From: Haliotis rufescens
Taxonomy: Eukaryota
NCBI RefSeq assembly: GCF_023055435.1
Contig: NW_025964361.1
Location: 54,560,001-54,624,000 of the forward strand
Direction of reading: 5' to 3'
DNA length: 64,000 nt
Notes under the pieces: generated by a model
The model's input: only the letters and a program-made list of their open reading frames with translations
Told to the model about the DNA's origin: nothing
The model's database searches: none
Shown: piece after piece, positions 628-48,430 of the stretch
Layout of the letters: every line of letters begins with the position of its first letter
Position numbering within the stretch: position 1 is the first letter of the stretch
Translations under genes and position numbers: made by a program

Positions 628-800
628 GTAAGTGAGTGAGTGAGTACGGTTTTACGCCCCTTTTAGCAATATTCCAGCAATATCACGACGGGGGACACCA
701 GAAATAGGCTTCACACATTGTACCCATGTCGGGGATTGAACCCGGGTCTTCGGCGTGACGAGCGAACGCTTTAACCACTAGGCTACCCGAACGCCCCCCA
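628..800 (-). mobile_element. tRNA-derived SINE, family A, full length
   Basis: A-box (TAGCCTAGTGG) and B-box (GGTTCAATCCC) on the minus strand, (ACTC)n tail, TSD GCCAGGAGA at 619-627 and 801-809; near-identical to 29974-30158. Confidence 0.92.
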
Positions 801-13654: not shown

Positions 13655-13965
13655 GGTATTAGAGTAGGTCTTCAACAACCCATGATTGCCTTAAAAGGCG
13701 ACTTTGCTTGTTGTAAGAGGAGACAAACGGGATCAGGTGGTCAGGCTTGCTGACTTGGTTGATGCATGTTATCGTATCCCAATTGCATAAATAATCAGAT
13801 CTGAACCAGACAATCCAGTGATTGACATCATGAGCATCAATCTTTGCAATTGGGATATAATGACATGCATCAAGTAAGTCAGTGAGCCTGACCAGCCAAT
13901 CCTGTAGTAGCCTCTTACGACAAGCATGGGTTGCTGAAGATCAATTATAACCCAGACTTTGACAG
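13655..13965. mobile_element. Two family C retroposon copies in inverted orientation
   Basis: A plus copy (13655-13787) is directly followed by a minus copy (~13786-13965); both match 35745-36010. Confidence 0.85.
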
Positions 13966-15148
13966 GAGGTTATGGGTTAGAAGAACAGGCTGATGTATGC
14001 AAATCATCCATGACACAGACCTACATGTACAAAGATAAACAAATAGATCAGGTATATCAAATTCATAGAATTACAGTTAACTCCAGAGCTAACAAAATCA
14101 GACCTTGTTTTTGACAGAACAAACTGATTTCGTATATGCATGTAGGATAAGCTATGTACAAACAACCTTCTCTACTCGGTCCACACCAGGAAGCTGCAAC
14201 AGATTGGTGCAGAACTGCCATATGTAGCCTCTCGCTGTGGATAGCACATCTTGGACATTACAAACTGATTTAATTACTGGTTGATTATTTGCTGATGTGA
14301 AACTAGGTAGGATCAGCTACAGCACAAATCATTTCCTTGTTCTACATCAGCTATATTCAACACAGTTGGTCAATATTACCACATCAGCTGGCAATGCACT
14401 TGCTGTCTCATCCCAGATGGAAGCATACCTGTCAATTAACAATGGCCACAGAGACCAATAATCAATACCGCTTGGAATGCAGTGACAATATTGGCGCCGA
14501 AGTGAGATGAATCAAGACCACAGTCTTGTTTAAGGTACATACCAGTCCCCCAAACCTCCATCACAATGGACACAGGATGACATTCACAATATCGAACAAA
14601 TTTACAAGTTGTCATATATACCGTCTCAAAACTGTCAGGAATCAATATCTGCCAGGACAGCACGACACTTGGGACACCAGTACCCAACCACCATAGCTTG
14701 TGTTATTAGCTGAATTCATAAACAACACACTTATGTCAGTAAAACAGATGCTGCACATCACGTCCGAGGTGACATGCAGTGGCAGCAGCTTAAATCTTGG
14801 ACGAGGATGTTGAGAGACGTCGGAAGAAGGATTACTCTTAAGACATATGGCAGGTGAAATGTACCATTGTCAGTAGCACCAATGACCCACAATGAAATAC
14901 CAAGCTTGCGGGTTGTGTTGTTAATCGCATCTATCAGCGAGTGGGGGATGGTGGGTAATTAGTGTACTGCCGTCAAATGTCATTCAGATCTGTGTTGTGA
15001 TGTTGTGCTGAGTGAGGGTTGTTGTGTTGGGTCAAGGTCGCATGTGATGGCAATGCTGTCACACTGAGTGGGTGGTGTGTGTGCTTAATGTACTACCGTC
15101 AACTGTCATGTGATGGCCATGTGACACGGAGCGGGTGGTTGGTGGGCC

Positions 15149-29973: not shown

Positions 29974-30158
29974 GGGCGGTCGGGTAGCCTAGTGGTTAAA
30001 GCGTTCGCTCGTCACGCCAAAGACCTGGGTTCGATTCCCGACATGGGTACAATGTGTGAAGCCCATTTCTGGTGTCCCCCGCCGTGATATTGCTGGAATA
30101 TTGCTAAAAGCGGCGTAACACAATACTCACTCACTCACTCACTCACTCACTCACTCAC
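29974..30158 (+). mobile_element. SINE family A, full length, young
   Basis: A-box TAGCCTAGTGG, B-box GGTTCGATTCC, (ACTC)n tail, TSD TCATGAGAAGTA at 29962-29973 and 30159-30170. Confidence 0.95.
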
Positions 30159-34484: not shown

Positions 34485-34751
34485 TTGGTTGGTTGGTTTG
34501 TTGTTTAACGCCACACTCAGCAATATGTCAGCTATATTGATGATGGTCTGTAAATATCGAGTCTGGACCAGACAATCCAATGATTAAGATCATGAGCATC
34601 GATCCACGCAATTGGGATCGATGACATGCATCAACCAAGTCAGCGAGCCTGACCAACTGATCCTGTTAGTCGCCTCTTACGACAAGCATAGTTGCCTATT
34701 ACAGCAACATGGGTTGCTGAAGGCCTATTCTACTCCGGATCTTCACGGGTC
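34485..34751 (-). mobile_element. Family C retroposon (non-tRNA head), full length
   Basis: 13-bp TSD TCCTGTACTTGGA at 34472-34484 and 34752-34764; 5' end GACCCGTGAAG; (AACC)n tail. Confidence 0.93.
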
Positions 34752-35744: not shown

Positions 35745-36010
35745 GACCCGTGAAGATCTGGGTTAGAACAGGTCTTCAGCAACCCATGCTTACCGTAGCA
35801 GGTGACTATGCTTGTCGTAAGAGGCGACTAGCGGGATCGGGAGGTCAGGATAGCTGTCTTGGTTGATGCATGTCATCATATCCTAATTGCTAAGATCGAT
35901 GCTCATGATATCAATCACTGGATTGTCTGGTCAAGATCAGATTATTTACAGACCACCGTCATTTAAGCTGAAATATTGCTGAGTGCAGCATTAAACAAAC
36001 AAACAACCAA
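35745..36010 (+). mobile_element. Family C retroposon, full length
   Basis: Starts GACCCGTGAAG; (AAAC)n tail; TSD AGCAAACATT/AGCAATCATT with one mismatch. Confidence 0.9.
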
Positions 36011-36979
36011 AGCAATCATTGAATACACACAGTGTGTACCTGATTCAGAGTGTTTGCATGTATTTCTACAAAGGTTGTCAGCTGGAGTGATCTTTTTTTC
36101 ACCAGCATACATGTGCAAAATCATAAGGTTATTCAGTCATGTTTGACAGAGACGATTCTGCCTGGCCATGTTGATCTTGCCCTGCCGACCGAAGCCTAGC
36201 CTTGCTCCAAGCCTGTACTGTATTATAAGTTCATGGATGTCTAGTAACTCTATCCTTTTAGTTGGCGAGTCTAGGTTAACAGACAGTAAAGATGCAAGTC
36301 TTTTTATTGGGACAACTTGTTCTTATTACTTATACAATCTAGGAATTATAATTTAAACTAATAATCATTTCCTTAGAGACTTGTGCAAGTCTAACTGAAG
36401 CCTTGATCAGTGGGTACATGGCTGACAGGTATAGTCAGCGTAATTGCTGCAAAAACAGCAAAATCTGGATAGATGTTACATCAACATTGTAGTTCCTAGT
36501 CCAGTAGTTTTGAAATGATCAAAGCCACTTTCAGCACAATCCCTATTGATTGTTTCTCTGACATCACCATCAGTCTGGCCAATCACAGGGCTGAAATGGG
36601 TAATCAGCGTGTCTGGGGAATCCCTTACTTATTGCACAATTTCCTGGTGTGAGGACCAATTAGATGATCTTGGCTATAGCTAATACAGGTATCAAGATAT
36701 TAAGACCGACAAGTATGATTCCGAATGATTGACAATACAGACCAATGATGAAACATTACAACTGATGGCTACTTCCGAACAGGCATTTTTCACACAATAC
36801 GATAACAGATATGGACGTTTAGTGTAGATTGATTTGTAAAGTTAACTTACTCTATGCAATCGAAAGATTTTAGCTTTAAATTTTTCCAGACAAGGATAGA
36901 TAAAATTTACAGGCACTAACCAAAAATTATCAGCCAGACACATTCCGGAGTATATAAACACTGACCTGTCCTTAAAAAA

Positions 36980-38794: not shown

Positions 38795-38944
38795 GATTCC
38801 GTGGGGACTCCGGGTTAGAACAAGTCCCCAGCAACTAATGCTGGTTGTAAGAGGCGACATAAACGATTGGGTTGTGAGGCTGACTGACTTGTTTGCTTGC
38901 GGGTCATCATACCAGGACAGTGTGGATCATTGCCCACAATATCC
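38795..38944 (+). mobile_element. Diverged family C copy, 5' half; resumes at about 39467-39520
   Basis: Head motif GGGTTAGAACA...GTAAGAGGCGAC; interrupted by the TIR element. Confidence 0.75.
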
Positions 38945-39461
38945 ATCTTCCTGAGGCAAGGGAGTTAACTGACTATAAAAGTCCAGTTTCCACCCTTGCC
39001 GAACCGGGCTGGTATTATGGAGTTAGATTTTGTCTGGACTAACGAGTCTATGCAAAGTCCAATCAAAATCGCGAACCGAAATCCAGTTTGTACACTGTCA
39101 TGCAGAGTTCAGTATATTGCAGGATTTGCAAAGCATGTGTACCGCCAACTCGATGTCAACAGATATTTTCCAAATCTTTTCATGTTTTTAATCAAGGTGC
39201 TCACATGATTTGATGCACTTTGCGATGTAAGACCCGTTTTATCATAATATAGATCTTGATTGTCAATCAGATCGTCTTGTCTTGGCACCGCCATTTTGTT
39301 TGAAACAAATGCAAGTGAAACAAGAGGTGGAATCTGATTGGTCCATAGGAAAGGCATAGAAGGGACATAACTCTTAACAGCCACTCATGGTGCAACAATC
39401 GAGCCCAGAATTCTAGCCTAGTTCGGCAAGGATGGAAACTGGACTCTTGCCTCAGGAAGAT
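38945..39461. mobile_element. Non-autonomous TIR DNA element (ATCTTCCTGAGGCAAG...CTTGCCTCAGGAAGAT)
   Basis: Bipartite terminal inverted repeats; related copies at 50740-51070 and 15149-15348. Confidence 0.88.
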
Positions 39462-41662: not shown

Positions 41663-41941
41663 TAGTTGGTTGGTTTGGTTGGTTTGTTGTTTAACGCCGC
41701 ACTTAGCAATATTCCAGCTATATGACGGCGGTCTGTAAATAATCGAGTCTGGACCAGACAATCCAGTGATTAATATAATGAGCATCGGTCCACGCAATTG
41801 GGATCGATGACATGCATCAACCAAGTCAGCGAGCCTGACCACTTGATCCCATTAGTTGCCTTTTACAACAAGCATAGTCGCCTTTTACGGCAAGCATGGG
41901 TTGCTGAAGACCTATTCTACCCCTGGAATCTTCACGGGGCT
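41663..41941 (-). mobile_element. Family C retroposon, full length
   Basis: TSD AGTCTACCTT at 41653-41662 and 41942-41951; 5' end GCCCCGTGAAG. Confidence 0.93.
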
Positions 41942-42073: not shown

Positions 42074-42329
42074 TTGTTTTGTTTGTTTGTTTATTGTTTA
42101 ACGCCGCACTCAGCTATATAATATATTCCAGCTCTATGACGGCGGTCTGTAAATAATTGAGTCTGGACCAGACAATCCAGTGATTGACATCATGAGCATC
42201 GATCTACGAAATTGGGATATGATGACATGATCAACAAGTCAGCGAGCCTGACCACCCGATCCTGTTAGTCGCCTTTTACGGCAAGCATGGGTTGCTGAAG
42301 ACCTATTCCACCCTGGATCTCTGCGGGTC
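42074..42329 (-). mobile_element. Family C retroposon, full length, single-hairpin variant
   Basis: 5' end GACCCGCAGAG; (AAAC)n tail; body matches 41663-41941. Confidence 0.9.
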
Positions 42330-44290: not shown

Positions 44291-47200
44291 CCATGGTATT
44301 TTCATTTCTGAAGTAACTTCAGAAATAGGGTAGGAATACAATGCCTGAGTGAACTGCCCCATTTATGATATAGTGCCAAATGACTTGCAGTCATGATGGT
44401 TTACATCAGCACTTATATACATCGGGAAACGTAAATGAACTATTTACGATACGACTCATTTTTTGGGTAATAATCTCCTCACATGCTTCCTCTCAAACCA
44501 GACGGAACTACATCAGAACTACATACAGTTTTTTACAGGAAGGAAATCGCAGGAAGAAAAACACTTTTATCCACTTACCAAATTTAACACACAAAATTCC
44601 AAGGGTTTGAGCTTATCACAAATATAAATCAATTTGTATTGTTGATAATAAATGGAACATGCCAGAAATATTTAAGACAACTGATAATTTTAAACTCCTC
44701 AAATAAGTTTGTAATGACTAATGTTCGAAGCAAATGGTTGCAAAATTATTAATTTGTCCTGAAGTATCACACAGTTGTGGTCTAAATAGCATCTGGTCCA
44801 AACTCGATTATTTACAGGCCGTCGTCATATAGCTGGAATATTGCTGAATGCTGCGTTAAACTAAGATCAAACAAACAAACAATACAATACAATAAAGTCA
44901 CAACCATGATCCAGTCACAAACATTCACAACCAGTGATACTGCCTTCTAATCAGCTTTACTCCCATCACTGAGCAATCAATCCCATCAACATGATCAATA
45001 CTGTTGGTCAGTCTAATTCATCAGCAAAATCTACTGCAACAAGGCAGTTCGCAATAAACAGCTCCAAATATATCCCACAAGACAAGAACCCAGTTCTCTA
45101 ACGCACATCCACAGCGCTGTGAAACCCATCTCAATCATTCTGTGGGAGGATCATGTCAGCCTTGTATTCTATAATCAGACTCAAAATCTATTTCTGATCA
45201 CGAATTCTACACCTAGATATTAATCAAGCTGATGCACAGGGTTGCTGAGATTCAAGATTCAATGGGTGCCGTCTTAATGCAAATGATACATCAAACCCAG
45301 CATCCACATGTCACTATCTAAATTATTCTAGTCAAATAGGGCGAGAGAAGAACATCCACAAATATGATGAAATATTCATGAAAAAAACAATCATGTATAA
45401 AAAGGTATTCAAACCAAACGGTGCAGTGCCAAAGCAAATGATATGCGAAGCTCGTAGAACAAATTTTCTACCTGGCCGCATTAGTTCCATTGGAGAAACA
45501 AATCTCGCCATAGTGACCACGTTGGCTGTCCTTGATGCAGATATATTTGCTACATTTGACACAGACTTACAGACATCCACCAGGCAGTGAATTGTTGCCA
45601 CTGTGCAACATCGGTTCAGTAAAATCCGATTGGAAATTTCCTTGCGAATACTTCATGTTGTCTAACCAATACATCATGAGAAGCATACAGAAACATAACG
45701 ATACATTATCCACTGGCATCAAAATATCAACGTCTGCATGATGGTAACGAAATAGGGAAGTCGAAATATTTACGCAACGCCAAGGTTTAACTGGTATTCA
45801 AGAAACACTCACATTGATCTAAATCAATACATTATTAATTTGTATCGCTCTGCTAGCACACAACAAGCCAAGTAACCCCAAAGGACTACATATGGAACCC
45901 TGCCACAAAGCCAAATATGGTGGGTGGGAAACTAGAAGTGGAGCAGACGTCAACTTCATTGACCTGAAGGAGGATTTGACCTCACTGATCAAGTTCATCA
46001 ACACATAATATAATTTGTTTATGGGGGCATTTTCTATATAAAGGTACTGTGAGCTGGCTAAAGGAGATGGTATGGGCTGACTGCTGGCTTGGTCGACCAG
46101 GCGTGGGGTGACCATGCCACAATCAATATCGGGGCAGGAGCTGGTGTACGTAGTCAACGTCTGCAAGGTGGCGATCAGCCGCGGATGGAAGACAACACTA
46201 GAAATATGGCAGGGCCAGGATCATTAGTTAAAGCACATTCAGGTCCTCAGTGAACACTTAAGTGTGCTGTAACAGTCCAGAACATGGAACATGTTATTGC
46301 AATGTCTCTGATGGTGGGAGAAGTATCACCAGACAGCTTGGCCCCACGGGGACATGTAACATATGGAGAGTTTGTAGAAAGGACATTTTGTCTTCTGCCA
46401 AGGATAAAAGTACACATGACTTTGCATGTAAACAATTATAGATGAGACAGATACACATGACTTTGAATGAGAGAAATCATATGTGGACCAGGTACACATG
46501 AGCTTGCATGTTAACAGTTATATAGGGAACATACAAGTTATGTTAAGAGTGAATTATTATTATTGATTTTGAAAGAAAACAATTCAAGTTTTGAGAAAAC
46601 TCCACATGAAGGCCCAAAACGATGAGGTTGTCAGCTGTAAACAGTCAAAGCCATACGTGGAATATTGAGCACCCTGCTCCCAAAAAGCATCCCTCCCCAC
46701 AACCCATCCTCCAATGTTTCAAAACCAGAATCCAAAGTTTCCTAAAATATCAAGATTATACAGAAATCTAGTCTGGCAGTCTGCGACTTTATCCACTAGT
46801 CCAAAGCCCTAGTCAAGTAAAATTCTGTTCAGTCTGGTAAGCTCAGCCGAAACTGGTCCATACAATAACACAAAAATCTACTCAAAAAGTGTCAAGTTCA
46901 GGCTAGTAGACCCACAAGCTTTTGGAACACACTGGTCTATTAATATTTCTTTCAGGCTATCAGGCTCAGCTTGTGACAGCCCATTGTAAGGCTCACACAT
47001 CGGTAGTAAAGCCCCCATGTTAGGAGTAAAATCTTCAGAAAACGATGTGGAAAGAAAAGGTCAGGGGATTTCATTAAGTCTGCTTGACACAAAGTGGAAT
47101 TGGTAAGTTTTTCTATGCACTCTGTTTTGAAACTCAATAGGCCCGGACCCATCAACACATCCCCAGCATGTTACAGACCAATTGGGCACGCAATACACTG

Positions 47201-48189: not shown

Positions 48190-48430
48190 TACCCATAAAG
48201 ATCTGGCTTAGAATAAGTCTCCAGCAACCCATGTTTGTCATAAAAGGCGACTAAAGGGATCGGGTGGTCAGGCTCGCTGACTTGGTTAAAATATGTCATT
48301 GTATCTCAACTGCATAGATTGATGCTAATGTCAATCACTGGATTGTCTGAGCCACAATGAATTATTTGCAGGCCGCAGTCATATAGCTGGAATGTTGCTG
48401 AGTGCGGCGATAAACAACAAACAACAACAA
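48190..48430 (+). mobile_element. Family C retroposon, diverged
   Basis: Head, body and (AAC)n tail match 35745-36010. Confidence 0.85.

What the first reader, a model, noticed from the sequence alone, without database searches (positions are those of the whole stretch)
35745..35845. SINE-like family C begins with a covarying, putatively pseudoknotted RNA head instead of a tRNA head: candidate ribozyme or novel retroposon leader
Seen: at least 8 copies (13655, 13965, 34751, 35745, 38795, 41941, 42329, 48190). Three have 10-13 bp TSDs and microsatellite tails, so they are retroposed, yet there is no B-box (GTTCRA) and no tRNA, 5S or 7SL head that I recognise. Four copies start at the same G of G(A/C)CCCG. 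The first ~75 nt can fold as a three-way junction: a closing stem CCCGT/ACGGG; hairpin 1 GAAGATC/GGTCTTC, whose loop (T)GGGT(T) can pair with downstream (A)ACCC(A) as a pseudoknot; and hairpin 2 GTCG-TAAGAGG-CGAC followed by TAA. Unpaired TAGAA, TAARAGG and CTAA are largely conserved. Established: some non-LTR retroelements carry 5' self-cleaving ribozymes (HDV-like in R2 and RTE, hammerheads in Penelope-like elements). The strand order here does not fit the HDV or hammerhead descriptors. Inference: the head may cut the element out of host read-through transcripts, or be a LINE 5'UTR-derived cis structure.
Basis: partly seen in the sequence, partly recalled or inferred. Interest (0 to 1): 0.8.

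Follow-up and report, generated by a model that had tools for sequence, protein, structure and literature searches.

The report
LINE-derived folded head of a SINE
This is one copy of a very abundant short jumping element whose first 70-95 bases are a folded RNA module borrowed from the leader of a LINE, a kind of element already described in molluscs, and nothing shows that it cuts itself.

Summary
Family C is a real SINE of about 265 bp, with at least 7450 first-look candidates in the genome, a sharp 5' end, target-site duplications (TSDs) and microsatellite tails. Rfam finds no tRNA, 5S, 7SL or ribozyme match on its head.

The head is not a new ribozyme class as far as these tools can tell. 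It is a roughly 72-nt module (94 nt where a 22-nt unit is duplicated). It is 80% identical (51/64) to positions 58-129 of the 5' UTR of a young, intact LINE with endonuclease, reverse transcriptase and RNase H domains in the same genome. In that LINE the module sits directly behind a 57-nt HDV-like leader, and 48 of 48 LINE copies start at that leader, never at the module. This argues against cleavage at the module's 5' edge.

The SINE tail carries the same stem-loop type as the LINE 3' end. This fits the "LP-SINEs" of Matetovici et al. 2016, reported in Haliotis among others.

Hairpin 1 is well supported by compensatory changes across four lineages. The pseudoknot has one covarying pair. The closing stem and hairpin 2 have none. 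What fixes the SINE's 5' end, and what the module does, remain open. Earlier notes of this scan reached the same reading on other windows of this genome.

The parts
35745..36012 (+). Family C SINE copy of the two-unit subfamily: head, body, LINE-type tail and microsatellite
   Evidence: 87-89% identical to 40 other genomic copies
35745..35838 (+). Head module (94 nt here because a 22-nt unit is duplicated), homologous to nt 58-129 of a LINE 5' UTR
35747..35751 (+). 5' strand of the closing stem (CCCGT); its 3' partner is 35831-35835
   Evidence: no compensatory change at lineage level
35752..35777 (+). Hairpin 1: arms 35752-35758 and 35771-35777, with a conserved 12-nt loop at 35759-35770
   Evidence: Four stem variants that all keep pairing
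35781..35785 (+). AACCC, the possible partner of the hairpin-1 loop GGGTT (pseudoknot or loop-loop contact)
   Evidence: One covarying pair: U-A 13, G-C 3, G-U 2, unpaired 6 of 24
35788..35809 (+). First copy of the duplicated 22-nt unit, holding a weaker copy of hairpin 2
   Evidence: 66% of cells paired
35810..35830 (+).
   Evidence: conserved in the LINE, no compensatory change
35831..35835 (+). 3' strand of the closing stem
35954..35996 (+). 3' tail stem-loop of the same type as the LINE 3' end and the tail of a tRNA-like SINE
35993..36012 (+). Microsatellite tail, (AAAC)n-like
34489..34751 (-). Family C copy with a 13-bp TSD
41674..41941 (-). Family C copy with a 10-bp TSD
42078..42329 (-). 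Family C copy of the single-unit subfamily
48190..48425 (+). Diverged single-unit copy
38795..38945 (+). 5' part of an old-subfamily copy (hairpin-1 stem GGGGA/TCCCC), followed from about 38943 by another repeat
13659..13968 (.). Two partial copies in inverted orientation: 13659-13786 on + and 13788-13968 on -
44792..44879 (+). 5'-truncated copy, tail only

Best explanation
Family C is an LP-type SINE, that is, a SINE with a LINE-derived head.

Shown:
- It is a non-autonomous retroposon of about 265 bp.
- Its first roughly 72 nt (94 nt with a duplicated 22-nt unit) are a copy of a discrete module of the 5' UTR of an I-group LINE (APE, RT and RNase H domains) of the same genome.
- Its 3' end carries the same kind of stem-loop as that LINE's 3' end.
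- In the LINE the module sits immediately behind a 57-nt HDV-like leader. The SINE lacks that leader and begins at the module's first bases.
- At least hairpin 1 of the module is kept by compensatory changes in the SINE and LINE lineages, while the loops stay constant. So selection acts on a folded strand, not on a plain DNA promoter alone.

Inferred:
- The module is an RNA-level cis element of the LINE leader that the SINE keeps so that its RNA is handled like LINE RNA. This could be recognition by the LINE proteins or the ribosome, or protection of the 5' end.
- The tail recruits the reverse transcriptase.
- The module is not itself a self-cleaving ribozyme.
- What sets the SINE's first base is not settled. 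Candidates are initiation in master copies, or trimming up to the closing stem.
For: Retroposon:
- 7450 first-look candidates.
- 35 of 38 full copies start at the same base within one mismatch, with unconserved flanks.
- 17 of 38 have exact TSDs of 7-13 bp.
- Tails are microsatellites.

No cellular RNA head: Rfam at E<=10 finds nothing relevant on 2 window copies, 1 near-consensus copy and 17 further loci, and ARAGORN finds 0. Alignment to this genome's 5S gives z = -0.3.

LINE origin of the head:
- 11 of 11 LINE copies chosen by their endonuclease domain share the 57-nt leader followed by the module.
- Young SINE head against LINE module: 51/64 identical, z = 23.9. Old SINE head: 41/50, z = 18.8.
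- Homology ends at the closing stem.

LINE identity:
- Open reading frames of 1228-1238 aa.
- Exo_endo_phos 1.9e-08 and RNase_H 1.3e-10.
- A 9-bp TSD around one full copy of about 6.2 kb.

Tail: the LINE 3' end, the family C tail and the tail of a tRNA-like SINE share one stem-loop with a changed but still paired stem.

Structure:
- Hairpin-1 stems are GAAGAT/GTCTTC (young SINE), GGGGA/TCCCC (old SINE), TGGAA/TTCCA (LINE) and TGGAC/GTCCA (LINE variant).
- On alignment A3 of 24 sequences, pair 9-33 is AU 8, GC 7, UA 5. Pair 10-32 is GC 13, AU 10. Pair 14-29 is UG 19, AU 4, CG 1.
- The covariation score is 0.234, against 0.132 +/- 0.013 for shuffles (0 of 500 reach it) and at most 0.137 for slid partners.

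Not a cutter at its own 5' edge: 48 of 48 LINE copies (11, 37) keep the leader. The 37 were picked with a query that began at the module, so leaderless copies would have scored equally.

Literature: LP-SINEs with a head of about 70 bp shared with LINE 5' UTRs, present in Haliotis (PMC4758252, sections 9 and 10 read).
Against: - I could not compare the head with the published LP-SINE, Nimb-17_LMi, I-3_DR or RTE-9_CPB sequences. They are only in figures, Repbase and supplements that I could not see. Identity with the published head is therefore inferred from its length, position and host group.
- The tail hexamers the paper quotes for Haliotis LP-SINEs (AATATA, ACTAAA) are not what I see before the repeats here, so this may be a different family.
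- Folding energies of near-consensus heads are not better than shuffles (z -0.29 to -1.31; LINE modules -0.48 to -2.19).
- RNAalifold gives another, weak fold (-5.17 kcal/mol).
- The closing stem and hairpin 2 show no compensatory change between lineages, and the closing stem needs a different register in each lineage.
- The major young subfamily has a G-A mismatch at the one covarying pseudoknot pair.
- There is no RNA evidence. Three small-RNA runs of a related species gave only 5, 44 and 3 reads on a near-consensus copy, and none piled at the 5' end.
- The RNA-level function is inference only. It does not by itself explain why the SINE starts exactly at the module.
Confidence: 0.78

Rival explanations
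1. The module is mainly an internal promoter at the DNA level (the 'LINE promoter' idea of Matetovici et al.). It starts transcription by Pol II or Pol III at its own first base, which fixes the SINE's 5' end.
For: The paper proposes this from the module's position at the 5' end of SINEs and of three LINE families. 35 of 38 SINE copies start at one base, a purine in the young subfamily. The hairpin-1 loop holds GGTTAGAA in part of the copies, one base off a B box.
Against: Compensatory changes in hairpin 1 with constant loops point to selection on a folded strand. In the LINE the same module lies at +58, and 0 of 48 copies start at it. No A box is seen, and the tRNA covariance model finds nothing at E<=10. 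Old-subfamily copies with readable TSDs start with C (read by eye). The authors themselves say that no experiment exists.
Confidence: 0.2
2. The head is a new self-cleaving ribozyme that cuts at its own 5' edge and frees the SINE from host read-through transcripts.
For: The 5' end is fixed at the base of a closing stem, and the fold is conserved and pseudoknot-capable. There are precedents for 5' ribozymes in LINEs and their non-autonomous partners: L1Tc/NARTc Pr77, named and listed.
Against: No ribozyme family of Rfam matches the head. 48 of 48 LINE copies keep 57 nt upstream of the module. A 22-nt duplication inside the junction is carried by the most abundant subfamily. The strand order does not fit HDV-like or hammerhead folds. 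The LINE already has a separate HDV-like leader.
Confidence: 0.04
3. The head is a badly degraded tRNA (or the 3' half of the tRNA-like SINE of this genome) and still works as a Pol III promoter.
For: The 72-nt single-unit head folds as a cloverleaf-like four-way junction (L069). There is a 15/17 match between one young copy and the variable-region/T-arm part of the genome's tRNA-like SINE: score 24 against a shuffle maximum of 23 in 1000.
Against: The old SINE head shows no such similarity (z = -0.9), and the LINE version differs in the same stem, so the resemblance is late and local. The tRNA covariance model and ARAGORN find nothing. The full-length match is to the LINE UTR (z = 23.9).
Confidence: 0.04
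4. The module is a barrier to 5'-to-3' exonucleases that also defines the 5' end, working like viral xrRNAs. RNAs that begin anywhere upstream are trimmed back to the closing stem.
For: It would explain together the selected fold, the SINE's exact start two bases before the closing stem, and the retention of the leader in the LINE. Established knowledge: HDV-type cleavage leaves a 5'-OH end, which Xrn1 does not attack. The architecture is a junction plus a loop-to-downstream pairing.
Against: No Rfam xrRNA family matches. There is no RNA data. Only one pseudoknot pair covaries. This is pure inference.
Confidence: 0.12

Closest known systems
LP-SINEs of gastropods and bivalves (Matetovici et al. 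2016, Genome Biol Evol, PMC4758252)
   Same: Both are short retroposons with variable TSDs and 3' tandem repeats. The head of about 70 bp is not from a small cellular RNA but is shared with the 5' end of LINE 5' UTRs. The tail is shared with tRNA-derived SINEs of the same genome. LP-SINEs are reported in Haliotis.
   Different: I could not see the published sequences, so sameness of the head is inferred. The paper (sections 9, 10 and methods read) treats the head as a possible promoter and does not describe its fold. Here the donor LINE carries the module behind an HDV-like leader, not at its very end. The quoted tail hexamers do not match.
L1Tc / NARTc Pr77 of trypanosomatids
   Same: A LINE and its non-autonomous partner share a short 5' module of about 77 nt that defines the 5' end (named; abstracts listed).
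   Different: There the shared module is itself the HDV-like ribozyme and promoter. Here the SINE took the module behind the ribozyme and left the ribozyme out.
HDV-like ribozymes at LINE 5' ends (R2, RTE and others)
   Same: The donor LINE's first 57 nt match HDV-type models from its first base.
   Different: This concerns the LINE leader, not the finding. The SINE head has another strand order and no Rfam match.
tRNA-derived SINEs (SINE2), including the tRNA-like SINE of this genome
   Same: The tail type is the same, so presumably the LINE partner group is too. The outline is cloverleaf-like.
   Different: There are no A and B boxes and no tRNA model match. The head is homologous to a LINE UTR.

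Membership tests
LP-SINE (SINE with LINE-derived head) | Short non-autonomous retroposon with variable-length TSDs and a 3' tandem-repeat tail | tested here: met
   17 of 38 copies have exact TSDs of 7-13 bp, and the tails are (AAAC)n or (AACC)n
LP-SINE (SINE with LINE-derived head) | First ~70 bp homologous to the 5' part of a LINE 5' UTR, with homology limited to that stretch | tested here: met
   51/64 identical to L088:582-653, z = 23.9; homology stops at the closing stem
LP-SINE (SINE with LINE-derived head) | Head homologous to the published heads (Lsa_2, Hdi/Hmi_LP) and to Nimb-17_LMi, I-3_DR and RTE-9_CPB | not testable with these tools
   The sequences are only in figures, Repbase and closed supplements
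LP-SINE (SINE with LINE-derived head) | Head not derived from tRNA, 5S or 7SL | tested here: met
   Rfam at E<=10 finds none; ARAGORN finds none; 5S alignment z = -0.3
tRNA-derived SINE | Head matches a tRNA model, with A and B boxes at tRNA spacing | tested here: not met
   No RF00005 hit on any head. Only a one-off B-box-like GGTTAGAA in the hairpin-1 loop, at +16 to +25
5S rRNA-derived SINE | Head similar to 5S rRNA, including the internal control region | tested here: not met
   No RF00001 hit. Local alignment to this genome's 5S scores 13, against 13.7 +/- 2.2 for shuffles
HDV-like ribozyme | Nested double pseudoknot in the order P1-P2-P3-P1'-P1.1-P4-P2', starting at +1 with a G.U pair | tested here: not met
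   For the SINE head there is no HDV-family hit, none on the module within the LINE, and hairpin 1 is local. The LINE leader, by contrast, scores 27.5 bits on RF02682 (E = 0.0016, below the gathering score of 44)
Other small self-cleaving ribozymes in Rfam (hammerhead, twister, hatchet, pistol and others) | Match to the family model | tested here: not met
   None at E<=10
Exonuclease-resistant RNA (xrRNA) | Stalls Xrn1 at a ring-like pseudoknotted junction | not testable with these tools
   No Rfam match; the function needs an enzyme assay

The most novel reading that the evidence does not exclude
The ~72-nt module is a portable device that defines and guards the 5' end of uncapped retrotransposon RNAs. 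It would be a pseudoknotted junction that stops 5'-to-3' exonucleases, as viral xrRNAs do. Read-through transcripts of SINE copies would then be trimmed exactly to the element's first base, while LINE RNAs that carry a 5'-OH from an upstream HDV-like cut keep their leader. It would be shared by LINEs of several clades and by SINEs.
Probability: 0.12. Interest if true: 0.8.

Novelty: new member of a known kind. Interest (0 to 1): 0.42.

Why it matters
SINE heads are textbook derivatives of Pol III RNAs. The LINE-derived heads reported in 2016 remain unexplained, and that paper states that no experiment exists.

This locus adds three things:
- It names a donor LINE in the same genome.
- It shows that the head is a bounded module kept as a fold: hairpin 1 covaries in four lineages.
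- It shows that in the LINE the module sits behind a separate HDV-like leader and is never the 5' end (0 of 48 copies).

Together these narrow the options. Self-cleavage becomes unlikely and a promoter-only role less likely. The question of how a SINE without a Pol III head gets a fixed 5' end becomes directly testable with a few RNA-end and Xrn1 assays.

As an annotation the element is ordinary: an abundant repeat of a known kind.

Tried and rejected
1. 5S origin. From memory I thought the stretch after hairpin 2 looked like the 5S internal control region. Tested against this genome's own 5S gene, it scores 13 against 13.7 +/- 2.2 for shuffles, and Rfam shows nothing. Rejected.

2. tRNA or T-arm origin. 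One young copy gives a 15/17 local match to the tRNA-like SINE of this genome. The old subfamily does not (z = -0.9), and the whole head matches the LINE UTR. Rejected as the origin.

3. Rfam. Five searches gave nothing on the heads.

4. RNAalifold on 60 heads gave a different, weak fold. This does not help the proposed structure.

5. Folding energies against shuffles are mostly not significant.

6. Metagenome scans for the module with two degenerate patterns. The first found 0. The second found 17 stretches, none of which shows the flanking CCCGTG or the hairpin, so I read them as chance. I therefore have no cross-species copies.

7. Small-RNA reads of a related species on a near-consensus copy (L017:1401-1900) gave 5, 44 and 3 reads out of about 57 million records. 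None piled at the 5' end. The only pile was antisense, at 1674-1706. This is uninformative about the SINE RNA's 5' end.

8. Literature. 'LP-SINE' terms occur in 1 paper of the library. A sequence-motif search found 1 unrelated paper. A search for HDV-like, SINE, pseudoknot and Nimb listed 8 papers, none of which by title or abstract start describes this module (listing only). The search for the Repbase names was flooded by an author-name term. PMC11481361: passages only. PMC11121367: passages only.

9. Column-wise counting of the closing stem across lineages failed, because each lineage needs its own register. I describe it by eye only.
Full report
THE OBSERVATION

The stretch 35745-35845 is the start of a repeat of about 268 bp that ends in an (AAAC)n-like tail at 36012.

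The 17-nt 'hairpin 2' motif occurs 9 times in the window at up to 3 mismatches, against 0.06 expected. The 31-nt start of the head matches only itself at up to 3 mismatches, so the copies are diverged. A tail-only fragment at 44792-44879 is added.

The copy at 34751(-) has a 13-bp TSD and the one at 41938(-) a 10-bp TSD. At 35745 I read a 9-of-10 duplication by eye. Four window copies start at G(A/C)CCCG.

GENOME-WIDE

The window's own genome (1.33 Gb) gives 7450 first-look candidates for the copy. The 40 candidates scored are 87-89% identical to it over its full length. Of 38 full-length copies in the window and the fetched loci:
- 26 start exactly with GACCCG, and 35 are within one mismatch at the same base;
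- the ten positions upstream show no preferred base (at most 18 of 38);
- 17 have an exact TSD of 7-13 bp within my search frame.

SUBFAMILIES

The commonest form carries a 22-nt unit, the one that holds 'hairpin 2', twice. Other copies carry it once: 42329-, 48190+, 13968- and ten fetched loci. The single-unit form has 1421 first-look candidates.

An older subfamily has 885 first-look candidates and 74-80% identity among copies. It includes the window copy at 38795 and has the same layout but another hairpin-1 stem. In four old copies whose TSDs I could read by eye (L078, L081, L085, L087) the element begins at the run of C before GTG.

NOT A KNOWN CELLULAR RNA OR RIBOZYME

- Rfam at gathering scores finds only two weak tRNA hits elsewhere in the window.
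- At E<=10, with the lax filters used for short inputs, nothing relevant falls on the heads of two window copies, a near-consensus copy or 17 further loci of the single-unit and old subfamilies.
- ARAGORN finds no tRNA.
- I had recalled a resemblance to the 5S internal control region. Against this genome's own 5S gene the head scores no better than shuffles.
- A local 15/17 match of one young copy to the T-arm region of this genome's tRNA-like SINE is just above the shuffle maximum. It is absent from the old subfamily, so I do not take it as the origin.

WHAT THE HEAD IS

The literature search led to Matetovici et al. 2016 (PMC4758252; abstract, methods and sections 9 and 10 read). They describe 'LP-SINEs' in Littorina, Haliotis, Ostrea and Saccostrea and in pectinid MESC SINEs. 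These are TSD-flanked short retroposons whose first ~70 bp are shared with the 5' ends of the LINEs Nimb-17_LMi, I-3_DR and RTE-9_CPB. They share bodies or tails with tRNA-derived SINEs. The authors suggest a promoter role and state that experiments are lacking. The sequences are only in figures and supplements, which I could not see.

Earlier notes of this scan on other windows of the same genome say that the same head occurs in a LINE 5' UTR behind a small HDV-like ribozyme. I treated that as a lead and tested it.

THE DONOR LINE

A search of the genome with the LINE endonuclease family PF14529 lists 150 matches of 3937 candidates, many in open frames of 1228-1238 aa. The region upstream of one such copy holds the module. 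Ten further copies chosen from the same list align with it.

All 11 copies begin at the same GGCACTCG, with unrelated DNA before it. All run through a 57-nt leader and then the module (CCCCCGTG ... GTGGG, 72 nt, L088:582-653). After the module the LINE and the SINE are unrelated.

- Young SINE head against LINE module: 51/64 identical, score 61 against 12.7 +/- 2.0 (maximum 23) in 1000 shuffles.
- Old SINE head: 41/50, z = 18.8.

The LINE copy on contig C290 is about 6.2 kb long and is flanked by a 9-bp TSD. It encodes an Exo_endo_phos domain (1.9e-08) and an RNase H (1.3e-10), with a weak RVT_1 stretch before it. That makes it an I-group-type LINE. I did not place its clade by phylogeny.

Its 3' end is a stem-loop followed by GTAAAAC and (ACTC)n. 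The tails of family C and of a tRNA-like SINE of this genome have the same loop motif and a stem whose letters differ but still pair. Family C ends in (AAAC)n or (AACC)n rather than (ACTC)n, so its actual partner may be a sister LINE.

THE LEADER

Rfam places HDV-type models exactly on the LINE's first 57 nt:
- RF02682: 27.5 bits, E = 0.0016, full model with P4 nearly absent, below the gathering score of 44.
- RF00094: 21 bits.
- Nothing falls on the module.

So the candidate self-cutter of this system is the leader, and the SINE does not have it.

AN ARGUMENT AGAINST CUTTING AT THE MODULE

I searched the genome with a query that starts at the module (L088:582-800). That gave 2203 first-look candidates, and the 40 scored are 98-100% identical. 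I fetched the 75 bases upstream of the 37 copies not yet seen.

All 37 have the leader: 36 with at most 4 mismatches without gaps, and one with a 1-base indel. All have unrelated DNA before it. With the first 11, 48 of 48 LINE insertions derive from RNAs that still had 57 nt upstream of the module.

If the module cut itself, or were cut, efficiently at its 5' edge, or if it made transcription start there, leaderless LINE copies would be expected. None was seen. These are independent insertions, but of one very young family.

THE FOLD

Minimum-free-energy folds of near-consensus SINE heads show four helices:
- the closing stem (CCCG/CGGG);
- hairpin 1 (7 bp with a 12-nt loop);
- a small hairpin AGCA/UGCU whose loop holds the CCC;
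- hairpin 2.

In the single-unit form this is a 72-nt cloverleaf-like junction. The energies are not better than dinucleotide shuffles (z -0.29 to -1.31), except for the window copy itself (-2.96). LINE modules partly fold otherwise. RNAalifold on 60 heads gives a different, weak structure.

Copies of a SINE decay neutrally, so only differences between master lineages count. At that level hairpin 1 has four stem versions that all pair:
- young SINE: GAAGAT/GTCTTC;
- old SINE: GGGGA/TCCCC;
- LINE: TGGAA/TTCCA;
- LINE variant: TGGAC/GTCCA.

On a 24-row alignment of young, old and LINE versions (A3):
- pair 9-33 is AU 8, GC 7, UA 5, GU 2, unpaired 2;
- pair 10-32 is GC 13, AU 10;
- pair 14-29 is UG 19, AU 4, CG 1;
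- hairpin 1 is paired in 90.5% of cells;
- the whole-structure covariation score is 0.234, against 0.132 +/- 0.013 for shuffles (0 of 500) and at most 0.137 when partners are slid.

The loop-to-downstream pairing (GGG(G/U)U with (A/C)CCC) has one pair with changes on both sides: UA 13, GC 3, GU 2, unpaired 6. The unpaired cases are the major young form. On the 60 SINE heads alone it shows no covariation.

Hairpin 2 and the small hairpin are conserved but do not covary. The closing stem is Watson-Crick in the young SINE, partly wobble in the LINE, and 3-4 of 5 in the old SINE, each in its own register (by eye).

So 'covarying' is right for hairpin 1, weakly supported for the pseudoknot, and unsupported though not contradicted for the rest. 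The most successful subfamily carries a second copy of hairpin 2 inside the junction. This shows that the junction geometry is not tightly constrained.

HOW IT MOST LIKELY WORKS

Shown: the SINE has taken from the LINE group both a bounded 5' leader module and the 3' stem-loop.

Inferred from established knowledge of stringent LINE-SINE pairs: the 3' stem-loop recruits the reverse transcriptase.

For the head, constant loops with covarying stems in both SINE and LINE point to an RNA-level role common to both. Its internal position in the LINE, with 0 of 48 LINE copies starting there, argues against self-cleavage and against a promoter that starts at its own edge.

My best reading is a cis element of the LINE leader that helps the RNA to be kept or used by the LINE machinery, through protein or ribosome recognition or 5'-end protection. 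I give roughly 0.6 to an RNA-level role of some kind, 0.2 to a promoter-only role and 0.04 to a ribozyme.

What fixes the SINE's first base is open. It could be initiation in a few master copies. It could also be trimming of longer transcripts up to the closing stem. The trimming variant would also explain why a leader that ends in a 5'-OH stays in the LINE. I list it as the novel case at 0.12.

RNA DATA

The one run search found no run on record as RNA that holds the stretch. Three raw small-RNA runs of a related species label were available. Laid on a near-consensus copy they gave 5, 44 and 3 reads, with no pile at the SINE's first base. This neither supports nor refutes any reading.

COMPARISON AND NOVELTY

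By the features I could test, the element is an LP-SINE: a retroposon with TSDs and a repeat tail, a head of about 70 nt shared with a LINE 5' UTR only over that stretch, no small-RNA head, and a tail shared with a tRNA-like SINE. Direct homology to the published heads could not be tested.

The kind is known, and was reported from Haliotis. Earlier notes call this genome abalone, which I did not verify.

Three things are not in the sections I read:
- the fold with its covariation;
- the donor LINE in the same genome;
- the placement behind an HDV-like leader.

Several earlier notes of this scan had already reached these points on other windows. I file the finding as a new member of a known kind, with moderate interest.

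Noticed in passing
L088:525-581 (G000:C290, about 4675524-4675580), plus 47 other copies in L089-L098 and L118-L154: An abundant, very young I-group-type LINE starts in 48 of 48 copies at the same G with a 57-nt leader. HDV-type Rfam models cover the leader end to end with almost no P4 (RF02682 27.5 bits, E = 0.0016, below gathering). By eye, P1 is GGCACTC/GAGTGCT with a G.U pair at +1, and P2 is AAGAGC/GCTCTT.
   Followed up: partly
L039-L047 (for example L045:1501-1572, minus strand): A SINE of about 160 bp with a tRNA-like head (anticodon-loop GTC, 40-51 bits on RF00005). Its tail has the same stem-loop as the LINE 3' end and ends in (ACTC)n like the LINE. The tRNA model had 329534 first-look candidates in this genome.
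   Followed up: partly
L010:223-863, also L013:2480-2707: The first ~146 bp of family C occur as head-to-tail arrays with a period of about 149 bp (four or more units in L010): a satellite-like tandem derived from the SINE's 5' half.
   Followed up: no
window 13659-13968: Two partial family C copies lie in opposite orientation and meet at 13786/13788, forming a long inverted repeat.
   Followed up: no
L017:1674-1706: In one small-RNA run of a related species, 22 reads lie antisense on the SINE body, 16 of them beginning at 1704. All show A>C at 1683. This may be a small silencing RNA against the family.
   Followed up: no
window 721-792 (-) and 29978-30049 (+): Two weak tRNA-model hits (31.9 and 30.7 bits, gathering score 29), probably heads of tRNA-derived SINEs rather than tRNA genes. 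ARAGORN calls neither.
   Followed up: no
G000:C445:49379450-49729511: 5S rRNA genes in a long tandem array, mostly about 3.0 kb apart, all on one strand (47 hits listed).
   Followed up: no
window 38943-39110: Another abundant repeat (3079 first-look candidates, 89-92% identity among the hits) follows the truncated old family C copy.
   Followed up: no
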